Positions 16,511 to 64,000 are shown, counted from the stretch's first letter. The stretch is DNA of 64,000 nt from Lepidodermella squamata (GCA_047495785.1 JBLDXI010000032.1:1860001-1924000), one strand, 5' to 3'. Numbers and translations: made by a program. The notes: generated by a model not told the origin, from the letters alone.

Positions 16511-19500
16511 ATGGGAAGCTCCTGTTCCTCGGCAAATTCCTCGAGCGCATCTGATGTTCCGTACATCCGTCAAATAAATAATCTTGAAGAAATAAGTTTC
16601 ACTGATATCGATGCTGCCTGGAATTTAGCAAAGCGTGAAAGTTCGAAATCGAAAGGTACAGCAAAATCAACAATAGTCATGCGAACAGGCTGGAAAACTA
16701 TACGTATATTTGTGTCATCAACCTTCCGAGATTTCGACGCCGAGAGAGAAGTGTTGGTGAAGAAAGTGTTTCCTGATCTACGGGAATGGTGCCAATCGAG
16801 GAGATTGAATCTTGTCGAATGTGATCTTCGCTGGGTAATTTGAATTTTCCCTTTATTTTCACTAGTCTGAAGGACTCGTTAAGGGAGTGCCGAAAGATTC
16901 AACGACTGAGACAACGCTGAGGACCTGCCTGGGTGAAATCGACAGATGCTACAGAGAGAATATAATGCCATTTTTCATTAACATGACCAGCGAACGCATC
17001 GGCTGGATTCCGCTTAGTAATAACTTCTTTGTTTAGGTATTTACTGTCTTAATTTTCAATATATTTATAAAACTAGGCCACGAAGTCCCTGGAGCTTTGC
17101 GACAGGAATATCACTGGCTGGACGGTATGAGTGTGACGGAAATGGAAATTATGCATGGGGCATTTCGCATAGACAATCCGAATGGTTTGCCTGATTTGGG
17201 TTGAATTATGCTTCAATGAAAACTATATGTTCATACTCAGCTCTTTTCATGATTCGGGATCCTTCGTTCTTGGAAAGTGTTCCTGAGGAACAGCAGCACC
17301 ACTTCATCGACGAATGTCCATTGGCTCCATACAAATTACAGAAGTTGAAGAAATGCATTGCTGAGAAGTTCCAAGGAAACTCTCGACTTTGCTACTACAA
17401 CTGTCATTATTCAGCGCTGGACAAGGACACGAAAATGCCTCGCTTTAAAGGTCTCGAGGAAAATTTTGCTCCTGTGGTAAGCCTCTTGATGAAAAAGCCT
17501 CAGTCGACAAATATTTTCCTTTGCAGGTTTTAAATTTCTTTAAAGAAAGAATAAGCGTACAATACCCTTTGGTGGACGAGAGAAAACAGGATCCTTATGA
17601 AGACGCTAAAATTCAACATGATGCCTTCATGAAAATGGCATCCGAGCGAGTTGTGGGTCGCGAGGCTCTTATTAACGAGGTAATTTTTACGTTTTCATTC
17701 AGAAATCTTTGATATCGAATTGATTCGGTCTTAGTTTGTCGACACCTATGTAATGAAGAAGAGCGACGTCACACCAGTAGTAATTTACGGTGGGCCTGGC
17801 TTAGGTAAAACGTCGTTGATGGCTGCGTTTGCCGATCGATGCGCAACTCTTGCCGTCATGCAAAAGCTCCCTAAGTATTGTTTGAATGACTTATATGATT
17901 TCAAATATTTAATGTTGCAAATATTAGACCGGTTACCGCTAAGCGCTGGCGGGTGTTTTATCATTTTGTCGGCTCTGTAGCTGGATCTACTGACCAGCTT
18001 TCTATGTTAGTCCGGCTTCTCATTGAAATCAAAGCGCTGAAGAAGAACGACAAACGTCCCACAGCTCTTGACGAAGCTATGGGGTTGGTACGGGGTGCTC
18101 TTTCCAATCCTCGAACAAAGAACTGCATCATTATCATTGACGCTATGAATCAGTTCGACGACAACAGAGGCATGCCTGCTCCGATTACATGGTTGCCTAG
18201 TAAAATGTCCCAACAAGTGCGGTTATTTTTCTCATTGACTCCGGAGAGCTCTCAGTTCAAGGGCGTTCAAGAAGCTGGCGGGGAGGTCTGGACCTTTATC
18301 AAGTTACAACCACTCGATCGCGAAACCAAAGAAAAAATGGTTACTTCAAACTTGACTCGTTATAACAAAGTTTTAGACAGAGGTCAACTCGAGCTATTGC
18401 TCAACAAAAATAGCTCTGATAATCCAATGTGGTTGTCACTCGCCACGGAAGAGCTTCGAGTTTTTGGCCGCTTTCGAGAGCTGACCAACAAAATAATAGC
18501 ATTACCCGATGGGTTGCCCGAGTTAGAAGCCGACATTCTCGGCAGATTTGAACGAGAAGGTGACGGCCGACGGATGATTGCGACCTTGTGTTTACTCGAA
18601 TGTTCAGTCCATGGATTGCTCGAAAGCGAACTCTTAGAGCTGCTGGCCAATCCGGACATTCTACCGGCTGCGTTGATGGACAAAATCGTCGTTACCGGCA
18701 CGATGGATGAACTTTCAGACGACATTGGTAGCTCTGGGCCGACAATCAGATCTAAACTTGAACACAAGCGATTGACGGCTAGCGAGTGGGCAGATATCTA
18801 TCGTGTTCTGCGGCCGTTTATGAGACCATTTGGCGCATCTGGCGAAGGAAGACTGGACTTCTACCATCGATCGCTTAGTAAAGCTGTGCGAAATCGGTAC
18901 TTCTTCAAGTCTACAAAACTTCCTGATGGTACGGTCAAAACAGAACGTTTAGAAGACATCACGAAATGGTTTCACAGGGTGAGTAAATTAAAGCATTGGA
19001 TCTAAAATTTGGAAATGTTGTTTGAAAACAGCGCTTGGCGGATTATTTTTCCGATAATTGCAAACATTTGGAGCGGCAGGTTGAAGAATTTCCTCATCAT
19101 GCGTGGAAATGCGGTGATCGAAAGAGCTTGGAAAAATTCCTGTGTCGATGGGACGTCTTCAACACAATGTACGATCCTGAGTATTCACGCGAGATTGCTC
19201 AATCTTGGGAACATGTTCACTTCATGAAAGTCGACTCTAACTTCAGTCGCGAGAAAACCATGACCGATCTGAAAAAATCAGGCGATGTTTACCTCAGAAT
19301 GGAGCAGTGCTATAACCGCATGATGCAAACGGAGATTGATGAATTCGAAAAGGCCGATGAAACCCGCCGTAAGGAAATTCTCAACCGGATGGAATGTATG
19401 TCTCGCGTTTTAGCCTGCAGCGGTCGATTCGAAGCTGCTTATTCGCTGTGCGAAAAGCTAATCGCATTTGCGTTTCCTAATATCGAAAAACCCAACCCTG

Positions 19501-20525
19501 GAGTAAACAGCGAGACACCGATTAAAGAGCGCGATTATTCGAAAGCAGGCGCTGATCTTCCTGAAGATGAGAGGCTTAAGCTGGCTCGTCTTCTTCACCT
19601 TCAAGCTAGAGTGTACGACGAGGAAATGCGTCAAGTTGATTACATGTACGCCAGCCATATACCGAAATGCGTTCTGATTATCGACACCCTGGAATGTGTG
19701 ATAGGCATTTTGCGCGAATTAGCGCCAAAAGATATGATGTTAGGGCAAAGTTTGAACCGGTGTAGTTTTTTCTACTCCGGCGTCCAACAGCGTGGCGGCT
19801 GTCCAGTATGCACTCGAGCTTATTGCGTCGAAATGTCTATTCAAAGGATAAACGATGCGATCGATTTTTATCAAAAGATGGATGGCCAGGAAATCGCATT
19901 AGGTTTATATTATACTGCTCCTCTCTTATTTACGATAAATATCTTCGAATGATTTCAGCTGATTGTTACATTACCCGTGGAGTGGTTTCGGAGGGCCAAG
20001 AGCAACTTGACTACTATCTGAAAGGCATGAATATGATTCTGGAGAATGCTGGGCAGTTTCATCCCTTGCTTGATCGAACATACCTCAACGTAATTTTTCA
20101 CTTGTACTCGTCAGCTATTTTCAAATCTGTTCAATTACAGATTGGAATTTATTACGAAGAGGCTCGTAATGGACAGGAAGCGTATAACTATTTTAGGAAA
20201 TGGTACGAATTTATGTTGGAAATTTATGGTCGCAACCACCCGCGGACTTATCGTGCCGTCCGAACTTTGAACGAATACCGTTAGTTTCGATTTGGGAAAA
20301 TATTCTCTTGTAAAAAATAGTTTTCTGACGCTAGAGTACGTGAGAATCGCGAGAGACCGCGGGGACGAAGTTCCTCAGCTTGGCGCTCAAGATGTGGATA
20401 ACGAGAATGAGAAAGATGAAAAGGAGAAAGAGGACCCTCAGCCTCAACCTGAAGACGGAGAAGAAGAAGAAGAAGACGACGAAGAGATACCAGGTTCAGA
20501 TGAGGAAGTCGAGGAACACGCATAG
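16511..20525 (+). CDS. STAND-1: DUF4062-NACHT-TPR protein (TEP1/NPHP3/TTC41-like), predicted N-myristoylated, acidic C-terminal tail
   Basis: Starts MGSSCSS. DUF4062 motifs WKTIRIFVSSTFRDFDAEREVLVKKVFPDL..CDLRWGV and SVTEMEIMHGA. Walker A GGPGLGKT (about 17789), Walker B IIIIDAMNQF, NPMWLSLATEELR, LDFYHRSLSKAVR, TPR-like helices. Exons joined by roughly 50-bp GT-AG introns. Confidence 0.88.
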
Positions 20526-20769: not shown

Positions 20770-23700
20770 ATGAAGAAAGGGCCTCAAAAAGCTGCCCCGG
20801 TGGCCCAGCCTAAACCCGGTGGCCCGGCTAAAAAGACACAACCTGAAAAACCTGGCTCTAAGGCTACAGCTCCTGGGAAAGTAACTCCAGCCCAAGAGCA
20901 ACTGTCGAGCGAGCCAAGTGAAACAGAGGTAATTTCCGAAATATTATAACTCCTATTTCATGATTGACGTTTTGTAGGTAAAAACGCCGGTTTCCCCTAA
21001 ACCTGAGGCTCAGTTATCTTCTCCCGAGACATTTTTGGTATGAAAGCAACATAACTCATTTGGGCTGTGGCATAATCATCAATTTTCTAGAATTACATCA
21101 AATCGCTTGAAAACGATAAGCTGAAAGAGTTGAACTTTCCTCAATCGACGCAAGTCACTGATTGGATGCTGTTTTGGCCAAGGCTTTCTCCTGCCTTATT
21201 CTCATTCATTGAATCTGTTGATATATCTTTGTGTCCAAACGTTACGGACTATGGCGTTTTATTACTAAGCTATTACCTTCCGGCATTAAAAAAAGTAATG
21301 GATTTTAACCTCAAAAAATTCAATTTATAATTTATTATAACTTTGAAGATTAATTTGACTGGCTGCAAGCAGGTCACTGAAAACAGCATGCGTTTTCTTT
21401 TCGAAAAGTGCCAAGTTCTGGAATCTGCTAAGCTTGACTGGACCTCAGTGAGATACATCCCAGCCAATTTACCGAAAGCTAAATTTTCAATCGCAAATTG
21501 CCCGCTCATTGTTGACGAATCGTCGCTACCAAAGCAAATCAAGTATCCAAACGCATTGCCTAAAAGTTTCACATTTGCCAAGATTCTAGTCGTTAAGCCT
21601 CCATCGCTAGCTTCACATTTCGTTGGGCTGAGTATTTTTCCGATGGAAGGCAAACCTGACGCAACTCAAACGATAAATTGTTATCAAAGCGGGATTTTTA
21701 GGGTGATTGAGTGCGTCGATGGGCCTGTTGTCCAGTCGTTGATCAGCGACTTCTCTCTCGTTCTAATCCCGTGTTGTTTTGACGAGGAGGCATATCTCGC
21801 AACGTTGAAATCTCGATGCGCGTGGATATTCAGTCTTGCTAAACATGTTCGAATAGCCATTTATCCGTTTTCCTTGCAGTCAGCGAGCCCGCTCGAAGCT
21901 TTTGGAGCTCTGGAAAAATGGCTTGAAAGTAGTACAAAATTATTGAATGAGAGAATCAACAGCTCCATTATTAACCTAGCTAACAAAGAATCGCCTCAAT
22001 CAAATGATATTTTGAACAAACAAGAGGCGATGCTGGCCTTCAACTTTTCCAGAAACGTATTCATTATGGGCGATGCAGCTTATGTTAGGCAATGGGCGGT
22101 TGACAACAAGCCACATAAAGATATTCCCAAGTCGATTTGGTTGGCCTGCCAATCCTTCGATAAAGCAAAAGCTGTCCTGAAAAAGGCGGCAAAGACGTTC
22201 TTTAGTGTTGATCATTTGAGAAAATTGATTAGCGGAGATTTCTCTGGTTATTGCTGGAATTCCTTAGTTTCGTTCCTGGTAGAAACTGGAAATTGCTGGG
22301 TTGAAACTTCCTATGGTAACGATGGGCTGAATGTCGGACCTAAGCACGCATTTGCTTTAATCGAATCTTTCGTGGCGTTTTTGAACAGCTTAATAACTAT
22401 GGAGAAGCCTCGAACCGCCGCAGGTGAAGATATTACCTGCTTAGACACCGATACTCCGTTGTTGTCTTTTGATGCTGCGTTCAAGTTGTTCATGAATGAA
22501 GAATGCTTTAAAGAGGAGGAATGCCTCAGATTAATGCGATATTTCGAATTCATGGGGCTTGCAATAGTTAGATCCGAATATGTTCTGATACTATCAGATC
22601 TGCGTCCACAGCCACCGATCCCGATAACTCATTTCCATTATGAGAACGAAGACACCATTGAGATCAAAACGAACTATCAGCTAACCTGCCTGCCGAGTAA
22701 CGTTCTCCCTGGATTAGTTGCCCTGATGGTCAAAGTTTTCCCGCCTACGATATTATGGCGTACTGGAGCTTACTTCTGCGAAGCCTCGATTTTAGGCATT
22801 TTATTGACTGCTGACGATGAAGCTCAGGTTATAACACTTAATCTAAGCTATGACAATACCGCTGACTTGGTTCAGTTGCCTTCATACGCCAATAATATCC
22901 AGCAATTCAAGGCTGCCCTTGATTACTCGCTATGTTTGGCAACTACCGCTTGTTGTGTTTACCTTCAGCCGTTTTCGATCGTTGACCTGACTAACGATGC
23001 CAACTTTATTTCTCCTGATTCTATTACCCACCCTGTGAAGTCTATGCCGGAAACTCGGCTCTTCTCCAGGCAGTTTGACCATACTCTTGCGAGATGTACT
23101 CGCTGCTCCATTGATATTTCGGCAATTGCTTCAATAGGTCGCTATCATGTCAGAAACGTTGGCATTAATGACGAGCCAGTTCTTGAACCCGTTAAAGGTT
23201 CAGAGATCGCGACGACGAAATTTAGCCTTGGCAACTACGAGATCGCCGATGGCGAATCTTTGCCGATATTCAACGATTTTGCGCCCAGCTTTTTCGAAAT
23301 TTCGAATACGGATCTTCTGGAGAATTTGATACTTTACCCGGGCAGCTCGTTCACCGGATCGGGATTAGCTATGGCATTTGCCGAGGGTAACAAGCTGATT
23401 GAATGCGTCTACGTATATGGAATCGACGGCGACAAGCCTGCAAAAAAGCCAAGCAAGCCGAGCACGCCATCGAAAATTAGCAGTAAATCTCCGATAGCCA
23501 TTAAATCGAGTTTGCGAGTTGATGTTTGCCTGGGAAAGCAGAAACCTGACCCTGAGCTTTCATTGACAGTCAGTACAGACGGGGCCATTGTATTCGAGAT
23601 CCAAGTTCCATTGAATCATCAGCTAAGTTTGAGGGCTACTTTCCGCAAACTTTCTGTCGAAAAATTGAAATTTGTGTCCTTTAACCGCAACTTGGGTGTA

Positions 23701-26700
23701 TTCAGGCGAGGATTCTTCCCAAGCTCAGGGGGTTCTGCACAGAGAGCCCAAATTGGCATGCGTCTCGAAGCTGTGGACTTAGTTTACCCCCATTTAATCG
23801 CAGTTGCTCGTATCGACGAGATAGCCCTAGATGGAAGATGGCTGATCAAATTCGATGGTTGGGGATCCAGGTTTGATTACTGGGCAGAGCCGACAGCTGA
23901 ACATTTGTTTCCATGCGGTTTTATGGAGTATGCCGGGAAATATCCTGATGTTATGAAAAAGTTGTGTGAAGTGAGAAAGCAGAACATTACAACTCAACTG
24001 CAGCGTCCTAAAAGCACAGATTATTCGCAAAGCCCCTTCCCTTGGCTGCAGTATTTCAGCGTCGTTAAAGAAGAGCGAGATGGAGAGCCAATAATTGCTC
24101 AAGCGGTGCCTTTGCACCTGTTCGGAAAATCGCATTTGTTGGGATTTGACAAGGATCCGAACTGTAATCAATACATGAACGTGGGAGGACATAGTCCGAC
24201 TTTGACCAGCTTGTTGTGCGACCAGGTTGCGAAATCTTTGTCAGCTGATGAAGAAGCTATCAACTATCGCGTGTTCCAGCATCTTGCGCTCCCTGCTGAT
24301 ATCGACTGGTCGCTGCTAGCTTGGCCTTCACGAGCGCAGTTGCTCGACTCGAAGAAAACATACCCACACTTTTTATGCGCCTGGCCGGACTTCGTGCATT
24401 TTGTCAACGAGCCTGGCAAGTTCGAAGATAACACCCCGGAATCGTCGGGCATGACTTTGGCTCTCGCAAATGTTCCTTCAATAAGTGGGCTCGCTAATAT
24501 TCTGAAGAAATGGCTCCTTGAGCAGCCTCGTTATATTCCAAACGATTTCAGCCTTCTCTTCAGTAATTTGGTCAAAGATTGCCCGTATTCTTACACGTTT
24601 TTGAACAAATCCGCCCTAAAAGCAGAGTCCGATGTCAGATATATCGAGGAGTGTATGAGGCAGCGCTTACTACCTTTTCTCCTGGAATATTTGCTGATAG
24701 TCGGGAATCTTGGCATCGAAAAGGTTTCTGAGATACTGCCAAAGCGGGCAGAGGTTGTCGGCGCTTATCAGCGTGTCACACTGGCTGCTCCGGGAACCAA
24801 CAACCAGTCAACATGGGCAAGTGTTACCGCCTCACCAAAATGCCGATTGCTTAACATGGGCGAGGCTGAGAAGCGAGCCTATTTCATGAAAGACTGTCCG
24901 CGACTTCTTTGCGTTCAACATGCTTTCCATTACACCAAATTTATGGAAACTACGACGCTTGATACACAATTGAACTGGAATTCGTCTCTTCCTGCGATCG
25001 GAAATTTTCATGATAATTTTCTAACCGTGTTCGCTCTCAGCCAGAGTGATGCGAGATCTCTCAGCGAGCCATTGAATATTAAGCACCCTTATCTAATGAG
25101 ATTCGCTGGATTTTTGTCGAATTTTATTGAACAAGCTGGTATCCCATCTTTAAGCTATTTGACTGAGCTTTACTTAGCTAGAAATGAGCTGACCAGTTTA
25201 CCTGAGGCCATCTCGAACTTGGCAAACTCTCTCCGAAAGCTTGATTTGTCAAGGAATCTCTTCATTGAAATACCAAATGCTGTATTTGGCTTGAAAGCAT
25301 TGCAAATTTTGAATGTTGACTACAACCCACTGGAGAGAGTAGATGACGGGATTTCTGCTTTGACAAATTTGAAAAAGCTGTCCCTAAAGAGCAATACAGT
25401 TAAAGCTTTCCCAGACGCTTTGTGGCAGTTGACCAATCTGCAGTATCTTGATATATCCGGAATGATACGAATAGCTACAAATAGCATTCACATAGATGAG
25501 GTTGTCACATTCATGCAAAAGGCGAACTTTTCATCGGCTGCCATCGAATATTTTCTCGATGGGGCACATGACGGACAGGGTCGAGGCGATGTTGAGTCAC
25601 TTAATGAGGATTTATTCAACTTCATCCAGCGGCTCGAACTGCCTCCTGGACAGCTTTTCCCTCAGGGGATTCTCCGCCTGAAAAATTTGATTTTCTTATG
25701 CTTGGCAAATCAATCGATTAAAGAGGTCCCTGCTGAAATCCAGTCACTGTCCCAATTGTCCCATTTGGACCTATCAGGCTGCTTGAACCTAGTTAATATA
25801 TCACCATTCATCGCCAAGTGCCCTTTCACCAGATTGAACCTTAACAACTGTCCCCAGCTAAAAACCCCTCCTGAAGAAATTCGTAAGAGTTATTTCGAGC
25901 GACTAATGCAGGGCTCGGTGCAATGCCGTCGAACTAAATTGATGTTCATCGGACTGGGCGGGGCTGGCAAAACCACTCTAGCCCACGCGTTGACCAAAGG
26001 CTCGAAAACTGTATCAAAATTTGAAGTAACTGATGGCATCGATATCACCAAGTGGGAAGTTTCAGATATCGAATTTCGAATGTGGGACTTTGCTGGGCAA
26101 GTAGTTTACTACAACACTCACCAGTTTTTCATTTCAAAAAGGGCTGTTTATTTGTTGGTTTGGAATATCAGGCTTGGCCATGAACATGCGGGTCTTGACT
26201 TCTGGCTTAGTTCTATTGCCTCTCACGCCCCAGGGGCCCCAATTCTTGTCGTGGGCACGCATTGCGATGAAGTTAGTCAAGAGCGCTCCTTCCTACCAGA
26301 GGCTAATTATCGGTCTAGATTCGATTCGATTTCCGGATTCCATTATGTCAGTAGCTTCACAGGTGCTGGCGTTGAAGAATTGAAGGCAGACATCATTAAG
26401 GTGACGCTTGCACAAAAGCACATGGGAGAGGAAATACCGGCTTGCTGGCTAGCTCTCGAGGAAGCCATTTCTGGGCTAGCGGACGAAGAGCTCTTACCGA
26501 TGAAAGCTATGGTTGAGAGTGCCCGCGCAGTAGGCATTTTTTCTATCGACGAGTTGGACCAGGCATTACAGTTTTTGACCGACATGGGATCCATTCAATA
26601 CTTCCGTACCGACTTCTTGCGCGATATTATTATTATAAACCCGCAGTGGGTTGTGGATGTGATGGCTAAAATTGTTTCTGTCAAAAACACGCGTTATATT

Positions 26701-38384: not shown

Positions 38385-38461
38385 AATTATTTTTTGTTTT
38401 TAATTTTCAAAAATTATATACTTGTCAAATTCTATGACATTTTTCAATTTTTAGATTTTAA

Positions 38462-47400: not shown

Positions 47401-47800
47401 CCAACACGGCTCGCAGGGTGGGCTGAACAAATGCCAACTCGCCCTGGGAAAGGAGCTGTGGCTGTGTCAGGATCATCAAAATTCGGTGTTATCCCGCGGA
47501 TCTGCTGAAAAAAATAACGTGGAGGCAAATCGGGGCGATGAAGAGCCGGGGCCGCTGATGTCAACTGGCAATCAAGAGGCTGCTAATGTTAATGCGAATA
47601 GAGCACGTGGACATCGAGTTGCTGCGAGAAATCAAAGCAATGACGTGGCGGCTGTTGGGTCTCCAGCAGCAGCTGTCGCCAGTTCGCCGACTCCGTCATC
47701 TGGCGTTGGGGAAAGGGCTCAGGCTCGAGGAGTTCAAAGTTCATCATCTATTCAAAGTGTTGATACAGCTACAACTAGCCGTGCCTGTTCTCTTCAATGA
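38462..47800 (+). CDS. ROCO-3: same architecture with one MBT repeat
   Basis: ATG 38462 (MPPKK). Cys-LRR LDISFSSFVTDLGL. MBT at about 41982. GLGGAGKT at 44250. 13-nt microexon 44794-44806. TIR EVFISYCW..NCLREF; ends SRACSLQ*. Confidence 0.88.
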
Positions 47801-48324
47801 TGAAGAAACAAGAACTTCCACTATTTTTCACTATTAAACTGTGCTGCTTATTTATGCTGTTGTGATATTATATCAAAAATTAGATTATTGGAAAATGATA
47901 AATTTTTTATAATTATTTTTGCTGTTTTTTATTTAGATGTTTTATAAAATCGTTAATATGACTCATCTTCAGAATATCTTCAGGGCCGAGTTCAGAGTAA
48001 TGCAAAAAATACTACGGCTCGTGATGTTTTACTACTAAACACGAGCTTTCCTACTCAATGCTTTTTGCATTTTTTGCTTTCTCTTTTCATAGCTACGCAT
48101 AATAGAATGTGCTGAAGCTGTCTGGCCTTTGGACAACAGGTTAACATCGAGGTGCTATAAATTTCTTTAAATAATTGCCGCTATAATTAATATTGTTATT
48201 CGCGCGCCATGATCACGCCACCTCAGCAACCTCTATGCGACTATTTTTTTCTAAATTTTATTTAAAAATTTAGACTTGTTTTTTGGAATCAGGTTATTTT
48301 TCCTAATCATAACCGGCCGTTACG

Positions 48325-51300: not shown

Positions 51301-54300
51301 TTTATAAGTGTCTGATAAAACAAAACACAAACTTCTTTGGGCAAATTTTTAGCTCGGCAAAGGCCGTGCAGACCGTCGGATCTTTGAAGAAATGGCGTCG
51401 AGATGTGTCGACAATGATAGGAGCGGCGTTAGGTGTAGGCCTAGGTATCGAACTTGATTGACCTGCGGTATGGCTTGGCCCTACAAGCTAAAGTTGGCAG
51501 TGGAAGGCTTGGTTAGGGTTAGTAGGGTTACTACGGTCCTCCTGTGCTGTTTCTGAGAGCGCTAGTGATTGCTTCCCAGCCATCGATGACATTGTCGCGC
51601 AATGAGGTTGGCGGCCCACCGTGCAATTTTTTACACCGATTTACAAAAGGCTACCGATTAAAAAACATCCGCTTATAGACTTGTAGTGACTTGTCAAAGT
51701 TGTATTGAGTCAAATTTCTTCGAACTCAAAGCAGCTTTTTTGGGTGATTTTCGCCTTCGCTTCTTCTGATTCTTTGCGCGCTTATATTTTTCGATGAGAG
51801 CGGAATTTTCGACTTTTGCTCTGCGATGAACTCGCCTCAGCTTTTTTACTTCGCCAGATCGATCAAAGTAACAAGAACGCATTTGATGATCAGATCTCAC
51901 CTTTTTTCCTTCAATTTTCGAGCTGCTTGAGTAAATCGGCCTTTTCTTGTTGTAACTGTTCAATCATCGAGATACTCGCTGTTGCGATAGCAACACCTTG
52001 ATTTGCAACTTCAACGGCCTCGTTTCTGTTTACTTGGACACGGATTGAAAACCATCGCGGAATGAATCGACCGCAGGAACGGAGTTTGACGATTCTGAAA
52101 TTAACAAATTCTCGCCGGGTTGGCTGTTTAGATGACGCACTCCAAAAACATGTTTATCTCGAAAGCGTTTGAGCGTAGCCAGTGAAGATTTATTCAATTT
52201 CGCAACGTGCAACGGTCGTAGGCCTTTCTTCTTGCTGGAACCCCATTGGGCTTCTTCTTTGCCGGGAGCTACAGATATTTTCTTAGCTGCACTCTAAATC
52301 TATAGGCGGGTTGTAAGTTGTAAGCATGTACATGGTTTGGTTACAAGTAGCCATAAAAACGGTTCTGAAACCCTGACAATAAGCCTCACAGTGGCGGTTT
52401 ACGTAACGGCTTGTGTGACGGTCCGGAACCCGCACAATTAATTTCTCAATTTCGGCGTCGTCGACATTGAGCGTCGCGAAAAAGCTCACGAGCAAAGCTA
52501 TCCAAATGAACCACAAATCATTGCAATATTACACACCTTACAAGTTGACAATGGGTGGCTTGGTTAGAGTTAGTAGGGTTACTACGGTCCTCCTCTTCTG
52601 TTTCTGATTGCGTTAGTGATTGCTTCCCAGCTGTCGATGACATTGTCGCGCAATGCGCTGCTCGGCATGGCATGCATGGACGCACGACGCGCGACAGGCC
52701 TGGTCGTACTGCGCTGGTGAGGATGACCAGTTTATACTACGCAATTTGCGGATAGAGCTGAGAATTACCACTGTCGGCCTGTGGCCTTTGACAGTTGACG
52801 GGGAACTCCCTTGCAATAACTTTTTCAATGTGCTGGATGGACGCGCATTCAATAAGGGCCGTCGCATTTTATGCAATAGAACTCAGTTTTATTTTAAAAT
52901 GGGGAATTTTATGAAACAATCAAATTGAGTCACGTGGTTTCATCAGCTTTCTTTCTGCATCACTCTGCATCACTGATTCCGGCGATTTCGCCAACTAGCT
53001 CAACGTCTTCCGCATCCGGGACGACATGCTCCAGAAGCTTAATAGTAGCTTTTTCATTCACAAATAGCTGCTTGCGCTCACGGAAACTTTGAAGGAGGCA
53101 GTGGGGGCGTCATCAATTGTGATAACCTGCCCCGAATTTCTGACGAGTCCTTTTTGCGCACCGAAAACGACATCGGCTATCATTTTTTTGTCATCGCGCA
53201 AGAAAAATCGGTCGGGTTGCTCTACAGAACTACGTTCTCATCCTATGGCTGAAATTTGGTTCCGTTAGAAGATAGGAATTATAAATTATTATAAATTATA
53301 AATTATAAATTATTATAAATTATAAATTATTATAAATTATAAATTATAAATTTTAAGTTTTAAGTTTTTAGTTGTACCATTTTTGGTTTTCTGCTACTCT
53401 CTCCATCTAAGATTCTGAATTTTAACTTTTAATCTTATATTTAGAAATTGGACGATTCCCGATGGCAAGATGTTTATCGAGTCCTGCGGCCCTTTATCCG
53501 GCCTTTTGGGGCTAGCGATGACGGCCGATTCGATTTTTACCATCGCTCGTTGAGTAAGGCCGTTCGTCGGCGGTATTTCGCGCCCGCTTCGTCCGACGCC
53601 CCAGAAAGTGCAAAACTACAAGCCGAACGCAATTTCAGCTGGTTCCACCGCCGGCTAGCCGATTATTTCGGCTCACAGGACCAGTGCTCGGACCTGAAAC
53701 GGCGCGTTGAAGAGTACCCGATCCACGCGTGGCGTTGTGGTGACGCCGATGGCCTGATCAAATTTCTATCGAGTTGGGAAGTTTTCGATCTCATGTACGA
53801 TTCGGAGTTTTCGCGGCAACTTAGCAAAACCTGGGCGCTTGTCTTCAGTTTACTTACTGCGAAAGCGAAAAGCGAAGGCACGCTGATTAATTTGAGCAAT
53901 CGCAGGCCGGGCAATCTCGAGGGAATCTACGATAAAATGGAAAAAATTTACGAAGAAGCAGTAGATCAGGTATTTTTGAGAAATTTAAAAAAATTCCAAA
54001 TTTTAAGGTGGATTTTTTATTTTTTTAACAGTTGATGAATTCTGGTTGTGATGATAATTTGATTATCGACCGGCTTGAACGAGTCGCGCGAATTTTCATG
54101 CAAAATGGGAGATTTGAGGCGGCTATGAAGCTGGCGGATAGCATCATTGAAATGACGAGCGAAACGCTGACGGACGCAATAGCGGACGAAAACGAGGGCA
54201 AAACGGCAAGCCTCGATATTAGCTCGTCCGAGGAACAAGTCATAATTTTACCAAATTCAACTGCATCGACAGAAGAAACGCCTTTATTCGACGATTTTAC

Positions 54301-55078
54301 CAAGGGCAGTGAAGATGTTAAAAAAGCAAGGCTACGGCATGCGGGTTATGTATTTCTGAAATCGGAAATTCTCGACGAGTTCATGCGATCTGTCGATTAT
54401 ATTTTGAAAAGCCACCTGCCGAAAATTTTGATACTAGTCGAAGGTTTCGAAAAGGCGCTCGAGGTGTTTCGAGTGCTCGCCCCGGATGACCCGCGTTTAG
54501 GCCGTGGGTTGAATCGGCTCGCGTTTCATTACGCTGGAATAGCCGCTAGGGGTGGTACGGATACGATGACAACTGAAATGGCGAAGGAGAAGGCGGTGCG
54601 ACGGGTTGAGGAGGCGATTGCGTTTTACACGCGGCTAGGCGACCAGCCGGTTAATTTAGCCGATTGTTACATAACGCGCGGCGTGTGTGAGGGTATGGCG
54701 AATGAGGCGCAGCGCGAGTATTACATGCGAGGGTTGAATCTAGTCATTGAACACGCCGGGTTTTTCCACCCGCTGCTCGACCGCGCCTACCTGAACGTCG
54801 GCATCTACCACGAGGAGGCCGGCGAGTTGGAGGATGCGTATGCGTACTTTCGCAAGTGGTACCAGCTGCTGATGACAATCTACGGCGCCGGGCACCCGCG
54901 CGCCCAGCGCAGCATCCGCATTTTGAACGAAGATGCGTATAAGCAAATGGCGCTGTACCACGGCCACACCGTGCCGACAATCACGGCGGAAATGCTGGCC
55001 GAAAGCGAGGCGAATGACGATGACGAAAACGAGGCGGGTAACGACCAGGGCGTCGGCGATCAGATGAACTTTCCTTAG
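48325..55078 (+). CDS. STAND-2: divergent DUF4062-NACHT-TPR paralogue interrupted by a 2.8-kb intron containing mobile-element remnants
   Basis: ATG 48325 MAGCQPTQ..WKTVRVYFTSWFSEFDRERELLLKK|VLPDLQDWC. Walker A GHPGTGKS (about 49680), IVIVDAVNQF. Phase-0 intron 50610-53444 rejoins in frame to KLDDSRWQDVYR. TPR region LADCYITRGV; stop at 55078 followed by AATAAA. Confidence 0.82.
51001..51480 (-). mobile_element. Decayed 3' fragment of a non-LTR retrotransposon (LINE) ORF2: end of the reverse transcriptase and thumb region
   Basis: With two frameshifts the - strand reads QVRYLGLHLTPLLSLSTHLDAISSKIRR / LPKEVCVLFYQTLIK / PVSLYGAPTW. This matches the LINE RT signatures KYLG..L....H...I..K and Y...IRP...YG...W. 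Stop at 51020, followed by a short A-rich tract. Confidence 0.72.
51506..52655. repeat. Dispersed direct repeat pair of about 100 bp (about 51506-51605 and 52557-52655)
   Basis: Both copies read ggcttggttag(g/a)gttagtagggttactacggtcctcct..tgtttctga..gcg.tagtgattgcttcccagc..tcgatgacattgtcgcgcaatg. Confidence 0.9.
53277..53352. repeat. AT-only tandem repeat, (ATAAATT)n with ATT insertions
   Basis: aattataaattattataaattataaattataaattattataaatt..., directly after the right-hand inverted repeat. Confidence 0.9.
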
Positions 55079-56065: not shown

Positions 56066-59000
56066 ATGGGCTGCACCTTGACTTCACCGGAAAATCCTAA
56101 TCAAAGCAATAATTCACCTGCCACAACTAGTGCAATGACGTCTCATGGAAGCAACGATGTAGCAAAACCCTTGGAACCTCAGAAAAAGCTCCTACCATCG
56201 TCAAACATTAAACCCGAAGATTCAGCGCGTGGAGAGGACAAAAAGCCCGTTCTTTTAACAAAATCGTTAATTGATCTCGCTTGGAAGATAGCCAGTGAAC
56301 AGGTGGAAAGAAGTCGGCAGAAAAAACCTCCCCCAGTCGTCAAAAGGGCTTCATGGAAGACGATTCGAATTTTCGTATCATCTACTTTCAAAGACTTCGA
56401 TTCTGAGCGAGAAATTCTAGTCAAAAAAGTATTCCCAGATCTTCGACTTTGGTGCCAAACTCGCCGGCTTCATCTTGTTGAGTGTGATTTGCGATGGGTA
56501 ATGATTGGTCTGATTTTTACAGATGGATAAAGAAATTTAATGATTTTCAGGGTGTCCCATTGAACACGACAGCTGAAGCTCCATTGCGAACATGTCTCGG
56601 TGAAATAGACCGATGTATTTCGGAAAATATAGTCCCTTTCTTCATCAATATGGATAGTGAACGAATTGGCTGGATTCCAACTGCTGACCAGTTACCAGAC
56701 TGGGTGAAAACGGAGTACAATTGGATTGAAGGCATGTCTATCACAGAGATGGAAATAATGCACGCAGCATTCAGACACGATAACCCGAACGGTGAGCTAG
56801 TTGACCTTATGTTTTTCATAAAATTAACCTTAATCAAAATCAGCAATATTCCTAATTCGTGATTCATCTTTCCTGGAAACGGTTCCACCTGAACACAAAG
56901 CCATTTACATCGACGAGAACGAAATTGCTGCTTACAAGCTTGAAAAGCTAAAGGCTATGTTGGAAAAGCGATACCAGTCGACGAAGCATTTATTCCATTA
57001 TAAATGTCATTTTGGCGGTGTCGACCCGGTAACTAAATGGCCAAGGTTGATTGGTCTGGAAGAATTCGCTCAAGCTGTAAGTTGCTAAATCCTGTCTGCA
57101 AAAATTTATCTAACCTTGCTCTTGTAGGTTTTCAACTTTTTCCAGGAGAGAATTTCCTATCAATACCCACTAGTGGAAACAGAAAAACTAAACCCGCTGG
57201 AAGAATGCAAGCTGCAGCACGAAAATTTCATGCAGATGCATTCTCAAATGGTTGTGGGCAGGGATGAACTCATCACATCGGTATAATACTATGCTTTCCA
57301 TAACAGTCAGGCATTCTTACCGCCAATGATTTGAATACAGTTAATAGCTGATCACATAGTCAGTCAAACGTCGCGAAAGCCGGTTTTGGTATCAGGCGGT
57401 CCTGGTTTAGGAAAGTCTTCAATTATGTGTTTGCTCGCCACCAGATGCCATGAGAAATCATTGACTGCAAAGTTACCAAAGTAAGTGGTCTTACTCGCCT
57501 TCACTACAGATATCATTTGCTTTACCAAAGGGTGAAAGGTAAGAAATGGATCGTGTTCGGCCACTTCGTAGGGGCTCTCGCTGGTTCAACAGACCTACTG
57601 GCAATGCTGAACCGGCTACTGTTCGAGTTGGAAATTTTAGGCAGAAATGCGAAATTGCTCACCGATCTTGAGGAAGCTATGGGCATGGTGCGAGGAATTC
57701 TTTCGAAAGACTCTACGCCTAACTGCATTATCGTTATCGACGCGATAAATCAGTTTACTGACGTCAGAGGCCAGGTTGCACCTATTGCATGGCTGCCAAA
57801 TCGTTTAGGCGAAAACGTTCGCATCTTTGTTTCTGCGATACCAGAATCTGTGCAATATCAACGCATTCAACGAGAGTTTGGCAATGACTGGAACATCGTT
57901 CAACTTCAGCCACTTGATAGAAAAACTAAAGAGCACGTGGTATCTTCGTATTTGCACCGATATAACAAGTAAGTTTCACTTACTATTGTTTTGATTTGCC
58001 ATTTTAGATGAAATTTAAGGTTACTTGATGAAGCTCAAATGGAACTACTAATGAACAAGCAGGCATCTGATAATCCAATGTGGCTGACTCTCGCCGCTGA
58101 AGAACTTCGTGTTTTTGGCCTGGTCCGAAAATTGACAGCGAAAATCTCCTCTCTTCCTGATGGCTTGTTCGAGCTCGAAGAAGAAATTCTAGCCCGATTT
58201 GAATCTGAGAGTGAAGCATCTCTACTAATATCGACCCTCTGCCTCCTTGAATGCTCGACTTCGGGTCTTCTTGAGGTTGAATTGATTGAGCTTCTGGCTA
58301 CACCGAAACTTATCCCTCAACAATTATCCGACCTGGTCAAGTCCCGTAGCCAGGCTAATCTAGACCACGCACCAGCCGATGATTTGGTAGATGAACGAGG
58401 CTCAACCACAAGGAGGCGTATTACGGCAAGTCGATGGGCTGATGTCTATCGTTTCCTGCAACCGTTTCTGCGACCATTTGGCTCATCCGGAGAGGGAAGA
58501 CTCGATTTCTACCACCGCTCCTTAAGCAAAGTCATCCGGAAGCGTTATTTTCAATCAAATTCGGCCGAAGATTCTGTCGGCGAAATTCAGAAATTCTATT
58601 ATCGAATTCTAGCGGATTACTTTAGCCGTCCTAAGGCCGAGATCGAACGACGCGTCCAAGAATATCCGAATGCAGCGTTCAAATGCGGCGACGTCAACGG
58701 CCTTAAAGCATTCCTTAGTGATCTCGCTGTCTTCGATGCAATGTACGACAAAGACTTCTCTAGTCAACTGAGCCAAGGCTGGGCGTTGGTCCACGAGCTA
58801 ACCGAGAGGCCTAAACCCCCCGAACAAAGAAGCCAAAACGTCTACGGAATAATGGAGGCTACTTATATGCAAATCGTCGACGATCTGTGCGATGGGAAAT
58901 TCACCGGCAAAGATGCGCTGCAATTGCCGGTAAGATTAGGCCGAATCGCCCGCGTTCTCATGCAGAATCGTTGCTGCGAATCTGGTGCGAAAGTTGCAGA

Positions 59001-59760
59001 TCGCCTTGTTAAGATGACCGAAGTTGCCGATGAAGAATCTGCCTCAAACGAACAGCTACTACGCCATGCGAAAAATTTGTTCTTGAAGGCAATCATTATC
59101 GACGAAGATCTAAGGTTTCACGACTATCTTTTCCGAATTCATGCGGCCAATTATGATCCAAAGAAACCGCTACCACAGCTTGTTAATTTGATTAACTGCT
59201 ACCAGTTCGCAATAGCTATTTTCCGGAAGCTAGCCCCTCAGGATGCCCGATTGGGTCGGTGTCTCAATGGTGCAGCGTTCAATTATGCTGGAATCTCCAT
59301 GCGAGGTGGCTGCGATGAAATCTCAAGCGAGGCGGCTAAGCTGGCAGCCAGAGATCTCATTAAACAGGCGATCAATATTTACTCGAAGAAGGAAGATAGT
59401 GATCTGAACGTTGCAGACTGTCTTATCACAAGAGGTATCTGCGAACTGGAACCCACGCCGAAGCAGCTTGAATACTACACAAAAGCGCAATCTATGATTA
59501 TAGAAAAATTCGGGCCGTTCCATACGCTTTTGCTTCGAGCTTATTTCAATATTGGAATTTACTTTCAAGAGCTGGGCGATGGTGACCAAGCTCATCTTTA
59601 CTTTGAAAAGTGGCATCAGCTGCTAGCTGACGTCTTTGGTTCACATCATCCCCGCACGGTTCGCGCAGCTACGTTCGTTAGTGAGGCTAATTACAAGAAG
59701 TTCGCTGCTGAGCGAGCTGCTGCTAAGGCTGCCGATCAGCCTCTGAAAGAAGACCCTTGA
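56066..59760 (+). CDS. STAND-3: DUF4062-NACHT-TPR protein, predicted N-myristoylated/palmitoylated
   Basis: Starts MGCTLTS. WKTIRIFVSSTFKDFDSEREILVKKVFPDL; SITEMEIMHAA; Walker A GGPGLGKS (about 57394); IIVIDAINQF; LDFYHRSLSK; TPR helices ending HHPRTVRA. Confidence 0.88.
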
Positions 59761-60208: not shown

Positions 60209-60415
60209 ATGGATAATTCAAAAGACAGCAGTCAACCAGTCGATGCGAAGAAATGTGGCAAAGATTTGAACCCAGACCTAAATAGCAACACGGTTCTGCA
60301 ACCACCGCACAATGTCAAGAAAATTGCACCCGGAGCACCTTGGTCCAATACGCCGCGAATAGCATTGGAAAGAGCAAAACAGAACCAGACTTCGGAAGGA
60401 ACGAAAGATTCCTAA
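60209..60415 (+). CDS. Possible small hydrophilic protein (68 aa), no recognisable domain
   Basis: True ATG start; stop immediately followed by AATAAA (60417-60422); co-oriented with the array. No homology recognised. Confidence 0.25.
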   Translation: MDNSKDSSQPVDAKKCGKDLNPDLNSNTVLQPPHNVKKIAPGAPWSNTPRIALERAKQNQTSEGTKDS

Positions 60416-61300: not shown

Positions 61301-64000
61301 ATGGGCAGTTGCGGGTCAACGCAGGGTCACGAGATGCCTCCGCAGCAAGAAAAAACCAAGACTGAACCGCCTTCTACGCGACCTGAGAAAGGTCCACCGC
61401 AACAACCGACACAATCAACGCAAGAAATAGTGAAACCACGCGATGTAGCTTATCAAACGCCAAATAATAAAGTGAAGCAGTTATTGGGAAACTACAAAGG
61501 TACGGCTCATGACGAATTCGTGATTTCGACCGTTGATCAATTTTTCGGACGAGATGATTTTGTCAATCAAATTTTGAACAAACACATAGCCACCACAAAC
61601 AATGCTCCAGCTCTAATGCTTTACGGAGAATCTGGAACTGGAAAAAGTGCAGTATTGGCGGGGCTAAGCCGGAGATGCATGGCTATGGCCGCAAAAACTG
61701 AGCTTCCTAAGTATGTTTTCCTGCAGTAACGATTAACTCCGTTTTTAACATCGTTTTTGTATAAAGGACATCTTCAGGGAGACCATGGAGAGTTTTCTAT
61801 CACTTTATTGGCACAGTACCAGGCTCAACAGATTTGTTGGCAATGCTACGACGTATGCTGTTCGAGCTTCAAATAGTTGCTACAGAATGGGACCTGCCTT
61901 CGAAGCTCGAAGATGCAATAGGTCTCGTTTGCAGCGCATTAGCAAAACCCTCGTTGGAAAACTACATAATAATCTTGGATGGGTTGAACCTCATCGATGA
62001 AATCAACAACAAAGACGCTCCTATTACTTGGCTTCCGATGAACCCAGCTCCAAATGTCAGGTTAGTCGTCTCGTCGATACCCGAATGTGGCCAGTATCAG
62101 CAAATGAAAAAGGTATATTCCTCGTGGGTCTTCACGCAAATTCCACCGCTGGCTGTTGCGGCAAAACAGCAAATGGTGTCTTGCATTGCGTCACAGTAAG
62201 TTCGATTTTGAGATAGTTATTCTATAGATATTTGAGATATTGAGATGCAAGCAATGTTTTTAAAAATTAGGCGGCTCGCCCTCAAGAGCGAAATTTTGCA
62301 AGCTTTATTCTCGAAGCCGATATCTGACAACGCAATGTGGCTTACATTAGCTACCGAAGAGCTATGCCATACGAAATTTCAAACCAGCGAAGAGTATTTG
62401 CGCCTTATTGCCTCTTTTCCTGACTCATTGGAAGAAATGTGCGAGATGGTTTTGGAAAGACTCGAGAAAAGTACGAACTCTAGAATGAAAGTATCAGTTT
62501 TGTGCATGCTCGAATGCGCGGTCAACGGTCTCGTCTTGGAGGAAATTTTCGAATTGCTGGCTGTTCCAAACCTTCTTCCCAGTGCTCTTGTTAAAATAAT
62601 TCAAGCAAAGGGCGGCCTCAGCGAACCGGAGCAACCTTATGATCTCGCCTCATTGACAGAGAAAAAGCAGGTTGACTTCGGAGTATGGAAACAAGTAGAA
62701 GAATCGATCAGCTTTTACGTTCGTACTTTCGTCATCAATGCGAAAAACAGATTAGACTTCTGTCATCCATCTTTCAGCCGAGCTGTCCGTCAGCGTTACC
62801 TGCTCTCAACGCGCAAAGTTGACTCGATGTATCGAAATAAAATAATTTTGTACTGGTTTCACAACCGCTTGGGATCTTACTTCAAATCTCAATGTCCAGA
62901 TATAAAGCGCCGATGCGAGTGTTTCCCAATTCATGCCCACCGTTCAAACGACTCTGCTAGCCTCATCACATTTCTTTCGGACTGGGCCAACTTTGACACG
63001 ATGTACGACAAGGAGTTCTCCAGACCATTAAATAAGGCGTGGACTTACGTCTATGATCTAATTACCAAGGCCAATCGCAGAGATAAGCGTGGTAAAGTTG
63101 ATCAGACCTCTTCATCGGAGAAGTCGCCATCAAGCGTTGAACTGTTCAAACCAATGTGTGAGGCATACCTGGCTGAACTCTCAAAGAAATATCCCCTCAG
63201 CGGCGATGAATCACTAGCAAAAGCTAGTAAACCACAAAGGGATGCGTTTTCGGACCGATGTGAACGTGTGGCAACAATATTCTGTCAGAACGGTTGCTTT
63301 GATTTGGCGGTCAGCATCGTGGACCGAGTGTTGATCTTCGTGCAGATGGGGGGCAGAAGTGGAGACGATGTTGAATATCAACTGCAGTATGCCTCACTGA
63401 TGAACCTCAAAGGTGTGATCATTGATAAGAAAAATCGATCTATCGATTATATGTCGAGCGATCAGCTTCCTATCCTTCTGGCAGCACGCGTCTGCTTCGA
63501 AGAGTCAATAGCTATTTTCAGAGACAAAGCTCCAGCTGATGACAGAATCGGGAAAAGCCTCAATCGCTTGGCTTTCACTTACAGCGGAATACAACTACGT
63601 GGGGGTCATGATACTATCAGTGAAGGTGACGCCCATCAGGCTGCTCTAAGATCAATCGACAGTGCATTGGCGTTTTTCATGCCGCTCAAAAATCAGCATG
63701 CAAACTTGGCGGATTGCTATATTACTCGAGGTGTGTGCGAAGGAAAGGCGTGCGATGCCCAGATCGATTTTTATTTGCGTGCCTTCAATGTTATAGTGGA
63801 AGAATTTGGATACTATCACATTCTGTTGGATCGGCTTTATTGCAACATGGCAATTTATTATGAAGAAAGCGGTAACGCGGATAAAGCCTTCGAATTTTTC
63901 CGGAGATGGTATGAGCTTGCTACGATATTGTACGGTCCTACACACCCAACTTCACTTCGTACGATTCGAACCCTCCAAGAAGAAACGTATGCTAAGCTAG
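61301..64000 (+). CDS. STAND-4: NACHT-TPR paralogue lacking DUF4062, predicted N-myristoylated; 3' end runs off the window
   Basis: Starts MGSCGST, then a Pro/Gln linker leading directly to HDEF..FFGRDDFV and Walker A GESGTGKS (about 61625); IIILDGLNLI. Intron at about 62197-62270, then an open frame absent from the ORF track with DNAMWLTLATEEL, LDFCHPSFSRAVR and LADCYITRGVCEG to the window end. Confidence 0.85.

What the first reader, a model, noticed from the sequence alone, without database searches (positions are those of the whole stretch)
16511..64000. Candidate undescribed system: co-oriented cluster of N-acylated STAND-TPR proteins and C-prenylated MBT-ROCO-TIR proteins
Seen: seven large + strand genes from only two families, ordered STAND-1, ROCO x3, STAND x3, with at most one doubtful small ORF between them. 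Both families combine a repeat sensor (TPR or LRR), a nucleotide switch (NACHT ATPase or Roc GTPase) and, except STAND-4, a TIR-like effector (DUF4062 or TIR). They carry lipid-anchor motifs at opposite ends. Established: sensor-switch-TIR is the layout of NLR-type receptors, and TIR domains can be NAD+ hydrolases. Inference: the two families expanded together because they act as one membrane-tethered ATPase+GTPase signalling or defence module. I do not know of a described system with this pairing.
Basis: partly seen in the sequence, partly recalled or inferred. Interest (0 to 1): 0.92.

Follow-up and report, generated by a model that had tools for sequence, protein, structure and literature searches.

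The report
Mixed cluster of two NADase-receptor families
This invertebrate (probably nematode) locus really holds three lipid-tailed ROCO-TIR genes flanked by four NACHT-TPR genes that carry a TIR-like NADase domain, but both are old, separately widespread animal families that sit together only in this lineage, so a joint two-part system is unproven.

Summary
Seven + strand genes of two families fill 16.5-64 kb: STAND-1, ROCO-1/2/3, STAND-2/3/4. The ROCOs are MBT-LRR-Roc-COR-TIR proteins ending in SRAC-x-x-Q CaaX boxes. The STANDs are DUF4062(TeTIR/NIR)-NACHT-TPR proteins. Three start MG-x-x-x-S/T, STAND-2 starts MAGC, and STAND-4 has no DUF4062.

Both families are already known kinds. DUF4062 was shown in 2026 preprints to be a TIR-like NADase of STAND proteins. 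MBT-ROCO-TIR proteins are annotated across invertebrates and were noted in Aplysia. Both lipid motifs are ancestral to their families, not special to this locus.

For the "one module" idea:
- A diverged metagenomic relative keeps an orthologous ROCO-STAND-STAND block and has a second ROCO-STAND junction.
- ROCO-3 and STAND-2 are both transcribed.

Against it:
- The families are not adjacent in six other phyla, in 57 metagenome loci or in one further contig.
- Copies lie in single-family runs, not as matched pairs.
- No informative fusion and no shared upstream motif was found.

Best reading: a lineage-specific mixed cluster of self-contained sensor-switch-NADase receptors. The scan had already noted that the cluster continues into the next window. 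Interest is moderate.

The parts
16511..20284 (+). STAND-1: MGSSCS start, TeTIR/DUF4062 domain, NACHT, winged helix, TPR; multi-exon
   Evidence: Pfam DUF4062, HTH_NWD1 and TPR_NPHP3 hits. Exon 1 matches TEP1 structure 11gz_A at E = 1e-9. SVTEMEIMH catalytic-Glu motif in the exon at about 16881-17186. Walker A GGPGLGKT. Colinear with urchin and Lingula orthologues.
21166..29546 (+). ROCO-1: N-terminal LRR-like region, MBT (about 23758-23931), LRR, Roc (P-loop 25951-25974), COR-A/B, TIR (about 28003-28221), CaaX CVVQ (29532-29543). One short intron near 28700-28790; 5' end provisional.
   Evidence: Pfam; paralogue tblastn; termini; P-loop
29830..38384 (+). ROCO-2: two MBT repeats (best stretch about 32407-32577), LRR, Roc (P-loop 35035-35058), COR, TIR (about 37260-37448), CaaX CSMQ (38370-38381). 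Breaks at 35553/35590 and about 36250-36330 read as introns; start codon not resolved.
   Evidence: Pfam; tblastn
38462..38821 (+). Doubtful Lys/Gln-rich 119-aa ORF between ROCO-2 and ROCO-3. It could be a separate small gene, a ROCO-3 5' exon, or nothing.
   Evidence: No Pfam hit; no tblastn match in the window or in the relative's loci
39145..47800 (+). ROCO-3: N-terminal exon inside ORF 38932-39588, intron about 39540-39609, MBT (about 41985-42158), LRR, Roc (P-loop 44250-44273), intron about 44760-44825, COR-A/B, TIR (about 46433-46633), CaaX CSLQ (47786-47797).
   Evidence: Pfam; tblastn; sequence; RNA contigs cover 44780-47899
48326..55078 (+). STAND-2: starts MAGC (no Gly2). It has a diverged TeTIR (SENELELL motif), NACHT (GHPGTGKS) and TPR, with a 2.9-kb intron at about 50540-53445.
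   Evidence: Sequence; Pfam; RNA joints 48471|48521, 48588|48644, 48878|48929 and 49162|49210 with GT..AG ends; orthologous to the relative's L006 STAND
56066..59760 (+). STAND-3: MGCTLT start, TeTIR with SITEMEIMH motif, NACHT (GGPGLGKS), TPR
   Evidence: Pfam; orthologous to the relative's L002 STAND_b
61301..64000 (+). STAND-4: MGSCGS start, low-complexity linker, then NACHT (GESGTGKS) and TPR. It has no TeTIR/DUF4062 and reaches the window's end.
   Evidence: Pfam nSTAND1/AAA_16; alignable to orthologues only from about residue 296 on

Best explanation
The locus is a lineage-specific mixed cluster built by tandem and block duplication of two old, independent animal families of lipid-anchored receptor-type proteins. 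Each family is a self-contained sensor-switch-effector.

1. MBT-LRR-Roc-COR-TIR-CaaX proteins. The likely mechanism is inferred: a farnesyl anchor at the membrane, an LRR (and possibly MBT) sensor, a Roc-COR GTPase switch, and a TIR domain that keeps the conserved C-x-x-E glutamate as an NAD-cleaving or scaffolding effector.

2. TeTIR(DUF4062/NIR)-NACHT-TPR proteins. Again inferred: an N-myristoyl (plus Cys palmitoyl) anchor, a TPR sensor, NACHT ATPase oligomerisation, and activation of a TIR-like NADase.

Shown here: gene content, motifs, transcription of two of the genes, orthology of a three-gene block with a diverged relative, and absence of the linkage in other phyla. Inferred: enzymatic activity, lipidation, and an immune or cell-death role. 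The two families probably share a neighbourhood because fast-duplicating receptor genes pile up in permissive regions, perhaps with shared regulation, and not because one needs the other.
For: - Domains and motifs.
- The ROCO-TIR family is found in molluscs, annelids, brachiopods, nemerteans, hemichordates, amphioxus, rotifers, Trichoplax and Plectus at about 40% identity. 99 of 120 hits end in a CaaX box with the S-[RKQ]-A-C signature.
- STAND orthologues occur in urchins, sea cucumber, Ptychodera, molluscs, Lingula and Hydra. MG-x-x-x-S starts are seen in urchin, Lingula and Mytilus.
- DUF4062 is a TIR-like NADase of STAND proteins.
- All lineage STANDs form one clade (100/100), as do the ROCOs (100/100), so each array grew from a single ancestor gene.
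- Copies sit in same-family runs.
- The other family is absent within 10 kb in six phyla, on 57 metagenome loci and on L072.
- RNA contigs give separate transcripts, with zero depth over 47900-48289.
Against: - The relative keeps ROCO-STAND-STAND in the same order and orientation, and has a second ROCO-STAND junction. According to the scan's unverified note, the cluster goes on to alternate in the next window.
- More than one family boundary is not what two simple neighbouring arrays would give.
- STAND-4 and the STAND-2/Sa pair have lost or degraded the effector or the anchor. That could mean division of labour with a partner.
- The negative synteny tests cover only 10 kb on each side, in mostly large genomes.
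Confidence: 0.65

Rival explanations
1. The two families form one functional module on a membrane. For example, one family would sense and the other execute, or one would make an NAD-derived signal that the other reads, with the complementary anchors bringing them together.
For: - Orthologous ROCO-STAND-STAND block and a second ROCO-STAND junction in a relative whose QSOX is only 52% identical.
- Both families are transcribed.
- All genes are co-oriented.
- Effector-less STAND-4, and a degenerate TeTIR in STAND-2 and its orthologue, resemble helper/sensor specialisation.
- Alternation reported in the next window (unverified).
Against: - No adjacency in six other phyla, in 57 metagenome loci or on L072.
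- Orthologues lie on scaffolds of different length in Lingula, Pomacea, Mytilus, Lymnaea, Ptychodera and Patella.
- No pairwise co-duplication.
- No specific fusion.
- No shared upstream 10-mers.
- Each protein already carries its own sensor, switch and effector.
- The scan notes conserved local gene order between this genome and a relative for unrelated housekeeping genes too.
Confidence: 0.13
2. The genes form a co-regulated island, possibly partly operon-like in this spliced-leader trans-splicing animal. They are kept together for shared expression control but act independently.
For: - Uniform orientation and short gaps between the ROCO genes: at most 284 nt between ROCO-1 and ROCO-2, and possibly 78 nt between ROCO-2 and the 38462 ORF.
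- The scan notes trans-splicing and operon-like packing in this genome.
- Both ROCO-3 and STAND-2 are found in one RNA run.
Against: - The ROCO-3 to STAND-2 gap is 526 nt with no RNA contig coverage.
- Gaps between the STAND genes are 1-1.5 kb.
- No shared upstream motif was found.
- No spliced leader was seen. The loose 23 letters at 48295 look like a cDNA-synthesis adaptor (my recollection of the SMART oligo; not in the window).
Confidence: 0.15
3. These are not immune genes. The STANDs would act like NPHP3 (a myristoylated ciliary scaffold) and the ROCOs like MFHAS1/LRRK-type trafficking regulators, so the cluster would serve sensory-cilium or membrane-traffic biology.
For: - NPHP3 is a myristoylated DUF4062-NACHT-TPR relative.
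- TPR_NPHP3 and NPHP3_N Pfam hits.
- Human NWD1, NWD2 and NPHP3 showed no NADase activity.
Against: - The catalytic glutamate motif that NPHP3 lacks is kept in STAND-1 and STAND-3.
- Lineage-specific multiplication and rapid divergence (30-60% identity between paralogues) are typical of receptor families in conflict, not of housekeeping scaffolds.
Confidence: 0.07

Closest known systems
TeTIR / NIR (DUF4062)-NACHT-repeat STAND proteins: TEP1, NWD1/2, TTC41, NPHP3. Invertebrate orthologues are annotated 'TPR repeat-containing protein DDB_G0287407-like' or 'telomerase protein component 1-like'.
   Same: - The TIR-like domain sits directly upstream of NACHT, followed by a helical/winged-helix region and TPRs.
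- The RW|G and S-V/I-T-E-M-E motifs are present.
- The sequence matches TEP1 structure 11gz.
- The N-terminal myristoylation signal is as in NPHP3.
   Different: - TPR instead of TEP1's WD40 repeats, and no TROVE/VWA domains.
- Multiplied to at least four tandem copies here, one without the effector and one without Gly2.
- Sits next to ROCO-TIR genes.
Invertebrate MBT-LRR-ROC-COR-TIR proteins, e.g. Aplysia LOC101848126, described as a ROCO-containing 'TLR-like' protein in PMC9334734. Often mis-annotated as MFHAS1, LRRK1 or pats1-like.
   Same: - Same domain order.
- About 40% identity over Roc-COR-TIR.
- Same conserved TIR motif CVSDEY-KS-NC--EF.
- Same S-[RKQ]-A-C-a-a-X end.
   Different: Three tandem copies here. 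ROCO-2 has a duplicated MBT. No function is known for any member.
LRRK/MFHAS1-type ROCO proteins
   Same: LRR-Roc-COR core with Roco-type G motifs (GxxGxGKT, DFAGQ, THxD).
   Different: No kinase domain. The output is TIR domains, with a CaaX tail.
Plant paired or clustered NLRs (TNL sensor/helper pairs) and bacterial Avs/TIR-STAND defence genes
   Same: TIR-type effectors coupled to an NTPase switch and repeat sensors; genes in fast-evolving clusters.
   Different: - Plant pairs are typically head-to-head and of one superfamily.
- Here the second family uses a GTPase (Roc-COR), not a STAND ATPase.
- The genes are co-oriented.
- No dependence between the families is shown.

Membership tests
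ROCO proteins | Roc GTPase domain immediately followed by COR | tested here: met
   Pfam Roc (69-76 bits), COR-A (90-103 bits) and COR-B (44-90 bits) in all three genes
ROCO proteins | Intact nucleotide-binding motifs G1, G3 and G4 | tested here: met
   GLGGAGKT, DFAGQ and THCD/THSD in ROCO-1, -2 and -3
Metazoan MBT-LRR-Roc-COR-TIR family | Domain order MBT, LRR, Roc, COR, TIR, and orthology to annotated members | tested here: met
   Pfam. 120 listed hits at E <= 4e-197 with the same Pfam set. The window genes fall within the invertebrate ROCO-TIR proteins sampled.
Metazoan MBT-LRR-Roc-COR-TIR family | C-terminal CaaX box (my own criterion, derived from the hits) | tested here: met
   CVVQ, CSMQ and CSLQ in the window; 99 of 120 homologues end C-x-x-x. 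Actual prenylation cannot be tested here.
TIR NADases | Catalytic glutamate in the conserved motif | tested here: inconclusive
   The NC-LR-E-F glutamate is invariant in an alignment across phyla. It lines up with the C-W-D-E of Cat1 TIR only in a weak match, E = 0.1. No structure model was made.
TIR NADases | NAD+ hydrolysis | not testable with these tools
   Needs an enzyme assay
TeTIR/NIR(DUF4062)-NACHT STAND proteins | TIR-like DUF4062 domain directly upstream of NACHT | tested here: met
   Met for STAND-1, -2 and -3. Not met for STAND-4, which starts its NACHT after a 75-aa linker.
TeTIR/NIR(DUF4062)-NACHT STAND proteins | Catalytic glutamate equivalent to TEP1 E1008 | tested here: met
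   The urchin orthologue aligns SVTEMEIM to TEP1 SVTEMEVM in 11gz. STAND-1 has SVTEMEIMH, STAND-3 has SITEMEIMH, and STAND-2 has SENELELL with both Glu kept. Numbering to E1008 is inferred from the construct start given.
TeTIR/NIR(DUF4062)-NACHT STAND proteins | Walker A motif of the NACHT ATPase | tested here: met
   GGPGLGKT, GHPGTGKS, GGPGLGKS and GESGTGKS
N-myristoylated proteins | Met-Gly start with Ser/Thr at position 6 | tested here: met
   STAND-1 MGSSCS, STAND-3 MGCTLT, STAND-4 MGSCGS. STAND-2 (MAGCQP) fails. The modification itself cannot be tested here.
Two-gene sensor/helper or operon-type defence module | Conserved adjacency of the two families across lineages | tested here: not met
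   Adjacent only in this genome and one relative. Not adjacent in six phyla, 57 metagenome loci or L072.
Two-gene sensor/helper or operon-type defence module | Pairwise co-duplication (mirrored trees) | tested here: not met
   ROCO-1, -2 and -3 form one young clade, while the STANDs split earlier; the arrangement is RRR / SSS
Two-gene sensor/helper or operon-type defence module | Physical or genetic interaction | not testable with these tools
   No multimer prediction or experiment is available

The most novel reading that the evidence does not exclude
In this lineage a farnesylated GTPase-switched TIR receptor and a myristoylated ATPase-switched TIR-like NADase receptor have become obligate partners on one membrane. 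This would be a GTPase+ATPase two-receptor immune module with sensor/helper specialisation (effector-less STAND-4, degenerate STAND-2), kept together by selection for at least the time since two deeply diverged species split.
Probability: 0.12. Interest if true: 0.8.

Novelty: new member of a known kind. Interest (0 to 1): 0.4.

Why it matters
Both families are timely. DUF4062 was recognised as an NADase effector of animal STAND proteins only in 2026, and no member of the widespread invertebrate ROCO-TIR family has a known function.

This locus gives:
- a compact, nearly intron-free set of expressed paralogues of both families in one probably nematode-like animal, a group whose model species lack NLR-type receptors;
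- natural variants, namely an effector-less copy and an anchor-less copy;
- the observation that each family carries its own ancient lipid-anchor motif (CaaX in 99 of 120 ROCO-TIR homologues; MG-x-x-x-S in several phyla of the STAND family). This predicts that both work at membranes.

If the linkage proved functional, it would be a new kind of paired receptor. On present evidence it is an ordinary mixed receptor cluster.

Tried and rejected
1. Rosetta-stone fusion. Rotaria protein P0103 joins Roc-COR-TIR to NPHP3-type TPRs. Its TPRs match the STAND TPRs only at E = 0.04, which is generic TPR_12 similarity, so I rejected it as evidence.

2. Shared regulatory words. No non-trivial 10-mer is shared by three or more of the seven upstream regions.

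3. Spliced leader at the STAND-2 5' end. The 23 loose letters before 48295 are not in the window. They read like the reverse complement of a SMART cDNA adaptor (my recollection), so they are not evidence of trans-splicing.

4. Synteny around the relative's QSOX gene. The contigs are too short to reach a neighbour.

5. The small ORF 38462-38821 has no homologue and no Pfam hit, so its status is unresolved.

6. PDB sequence search with the ROCO-3 TIR region gave only weak hits, E about 0.1.

7. Taxon assignment by QSOX. The best named hits are only about 30% identical. The nematode reading rests on the TTTCAG acceptors, the roughly 50-nt introns, the Plectus sister position (86/91), nematode-like QSOX architecture, and the scan's notes on a spliced-leader gene.

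8. No structure prediction was run.


Full report
**What is there**

From 16.5 kb to the window's end, all sizeable coding sequence lies on the + strand. It belongs to two families.

*ROCO genes.* Paralogue-to-window tblastn resolves three of them:
- ROCO-1, about 21166-29546.
- ROCO-2, about 29830-38384.
- ROCO-3, about 39145-47800.

Pfam finds MBT, LRR, Roc, COR-A, COR-B and TIR_2 in each, all above the curated cut-offs. The Roc G motifs are intact: GLGGAGKT, DFAGQ and THCD/THSD. The proteins end SRACVVQ, SRACSMQ and SRACSLQ. The breaks between the long ORFs are short and sit at places where the paralogues align straight through. I therefore read them as the roughly 45-55-nt introns typical of this genome, not as damage. 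The true 5' ends lie upstream of the long ORFs and are not fully resolved.

*STAND genes.* Four genes (16511-20284, 48326-55078, 56066-59760, 61301 to the window end) are multi-exon. They are colinear from end to end with the 1042-aa sea-urchin and 1117-aa Lingula proteins P0127 and P0138.
- Pfam gives weak DUF4062, NACHT/AAA_16/nSTAND1, HTH_NWD1 and TPR_NPHP3/TPR_12 hits on the separate exons.
- STAND-1 exon 1 matches the solved TIR-like domain of human TEP1 (11gz_A) at E = 1e-9. The urchin orthologue matches it at 7e-29.
- The stretch that aligns to TEP1's SVTEMEVM, which holds the catalytic glutamate, reads SVTEMEIMH in STAND-1, SITEMEIMH in STAND-3 and SENELELL in STAND-2.
- STAND-4 has no such domain. 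A 75-residue low-complexity linker leads straight into NACHT.
- All four genes keep Walker A.

*Transcription.* Contigs of a 2015 run that behaves as RNA (X2) cover the 3' half of ROCO-3 and the first exons of STAND-2. They show four GT..AG joints in STAND-2 and have zero depth over the 47900-48289 spacer. Both genes are therefore expressed, as separate mRNAs as far as contigs can tell.

**What the two families are**

Neither family is new.

*ROCO family.* The Roc-COR-TIR part of ROCO-1 finds more than 120 proteins at about 40% identity with the same domain set. They come from molluscs, annelids, brachiopods, nemerteans, hemichordates, amphioxus, rotifers, Trichoplax and the nematode Plectus. 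One of them, Aplysia LOC101848126, was described as an Mbt-LRR-ROC-COR-TIR "TLR-like" protein (PMC9334734).

*STAND family.* It has orthologues in echinoderms, Ptychodera, molluscs, Lingula and Hydra. These are annotated "TPR repeat-containing protein DDB_G0287407-like" or "telomerase protein component 1-like". Three 2026 preprints show that DUF4062 (renamed NIR or TeTIR) is a TIR-like NADase. It sits directly upstream of NACHT in TEP1, NWD1/2, TTC41 and NPHP3, with WD40 or TPR repeats behind.

*Lipid motifs.* Both are properties of the families, not of this locus.
- 99 of the 120 ROCO-TIR homologues end in C-x-x-x, nearly always preceded by S-[RKQ]-A/T. This runs from Trichoplax (SSVCSVM) to amphioxus (SKACSLM).
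- The STAND orthologues of urchin (MGCGSS), Lingula (MGSGTSKK) and Mytilus (MGSGSSKK) carry canonical myristoylation starts. NPHP3 is a known myristoylated UNC119 cargo.
- I found no paper mentioning the CaaX box of ROCO-TIR proteins.

**Is the pairing more than neighbourhood?**

*Evidence for.* The window's organism has no close named relative. Its QSOX is about 30% identical to any named protein. ENA metagenomes, however, hold a relative with 52% identical QSOX, from the same samples as the contigs below.
- Contigs L006 and L002 overlap (98.7% over 2.8 kb). Together they read ROCO 3' end, STAND_a, STAND_b, DDE transposase.
- In trees, STAND_a pairs with STAND-2 (96/94) and STAND_b with STAND-3 (100/99).
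- The ROCO tail is nearest ROCO-3: 56% identity, in a weakly resolved tail tree.
- The ROCO-3/STAND-2/STAND-3 block is thus older than the split of the two species.
- A separate contig, L001, carries a full ROCO that falls outside the ROCO-1-3 clade. It is followed on the same strand by another STAND.
- The scan's unchecked note says the next window holds five more ROCO genes bracketed by STANDs.

*Evidence against.* I looked at the neighbours of orthologues in six other phyla:
- STAND loci in Lingula, S. purpuratus and Hydra.
- ROCO loci in Trichoplax, Adineta vaga and Dimorphilus.

Neither the annotation nor tblastn finds the other family within 10 kb. Other negatives:
- Where both families were listed for one species (Lingula, Pomacea, Mytilus, Lymnaea, Ptychodera, Patella), they lie on scaffolds of different length.
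- None of 57 metagenome loci with a STAND relative (239 kb in all) has any ROCO similarity.
- A 24.9-kb contig of a further relative (13.8 kb of it read) has none either.
- Within the window, copies stand in single-family runs. ROCO-1, -2 and -3 form a clade of their own (100/99), while the STAND splits are older, so the trees do not mirror each other.
- All lineage STANDs and all lineage ROCOs each go back to one ancestral gene (100/100 in both trees).
- The single ROCO+TPR fusion in Rotaria is uninformative.
- The upstream regions share no motif.
- Conserved local gene order with a relative is also reported by the scan for unrelated housekeeping genes. Inherited synteny alone is therefore weak evidence of function.

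**Verdict**

The functional claim is only partly supported. The most likely reading (about 0.65) is a lineage-specific mixed cluster of two self-sufficient, membrane-anchored sensor-switch-NADase receptor families. It grew by tandem and block duplication and is plausibly involved in immunity or cell death. A true two-family module remains possible (about 0.12-0.13). Shared regulation without functional dependence and a non-immune, NPHP3-like role are the other rivals.

The organism is probably a deep-branching nematode or similar. The evidence is the TTTCAG acceptors, introns of about 50 nt, the ROCO clade sister to Plectus (86/91) and a nematode-type QSOX architecture. This is not settled.

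Noticed in passing
ROCO C-termini 29532-29543, 38370-38381, 47786-47797; proteins P0001-P0120: The CaaX box is an ancient family signature. 99 of 120 metazoan ROCO-TIR homologues, from Trichoplax to amphioxus, end S-[RKQ]-A/T-C-a-a-X. I found no paper that mentions it.
   Followed up: partly
window about 28500-28700, 37900-38000, 47100-47200 (ROCO tails): A conserved motif LCEHE-x-GWH lies downstream of the TIR domains in every ROCO-TIR protein aligned. It has no Pfam assignment and marks an uncharacterised C-terminal module.
   Followed up: no
window 50540-53445: A 2.9-kb gap inside STAND-2, against the roughly 50-nt introns elsewhere. Presumably a large intron carrying inserted material; its content was not identified.
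   Followed up: no
window 13577-15289 (-): An intronless QSOX-type sulfhydryl oxidase (thioredoxin + Erv1/Alr). It is only about 30% identical to any named protein, and its short architecture is shared with nematode entries. This shows how poorly sampled the lineage is.
   Followed up: partly
window 48295 (RNA run X2): A contig carries 23 foreign letters before 48295. They look like the reverse complement of a SMART cDNA adaptor (from memory) and not like a spliced leader. This places an mRNA 5' end about 31 nt before the STAND-2 ATG.
   Followed up: partly
L002 5746-6330 and L003 4315-4899: In the relative, a DDE_Tnp_4 (Harbinger-type) transposase gene follows STAND_b on the opposite strand, where the window has STAND-4.
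   Followed up: no
window 32400-32900: ROCO-2 carries a duplicated MBT repeat (two Pfam stretches; internal repeat in tblastn). ROCO-1 and ROCO-3 have one each.
   Followed up: no
P0002 (Plectus sambesii): In the alignment, the Plectus ROCO protein has an extra inserted copy of the conserved TIR domain, so it carries a tandem repeat of that TIR that the others lack.
   Followed up: no
L072 306-3833: A further metagenomic relative has a nearly intronless TeTIR-NACHT-TPR gene with an SMTEMEILH motif. It sits near innexin genes, with no ROCO in the 10 kb downstream.
   Followed up: partly
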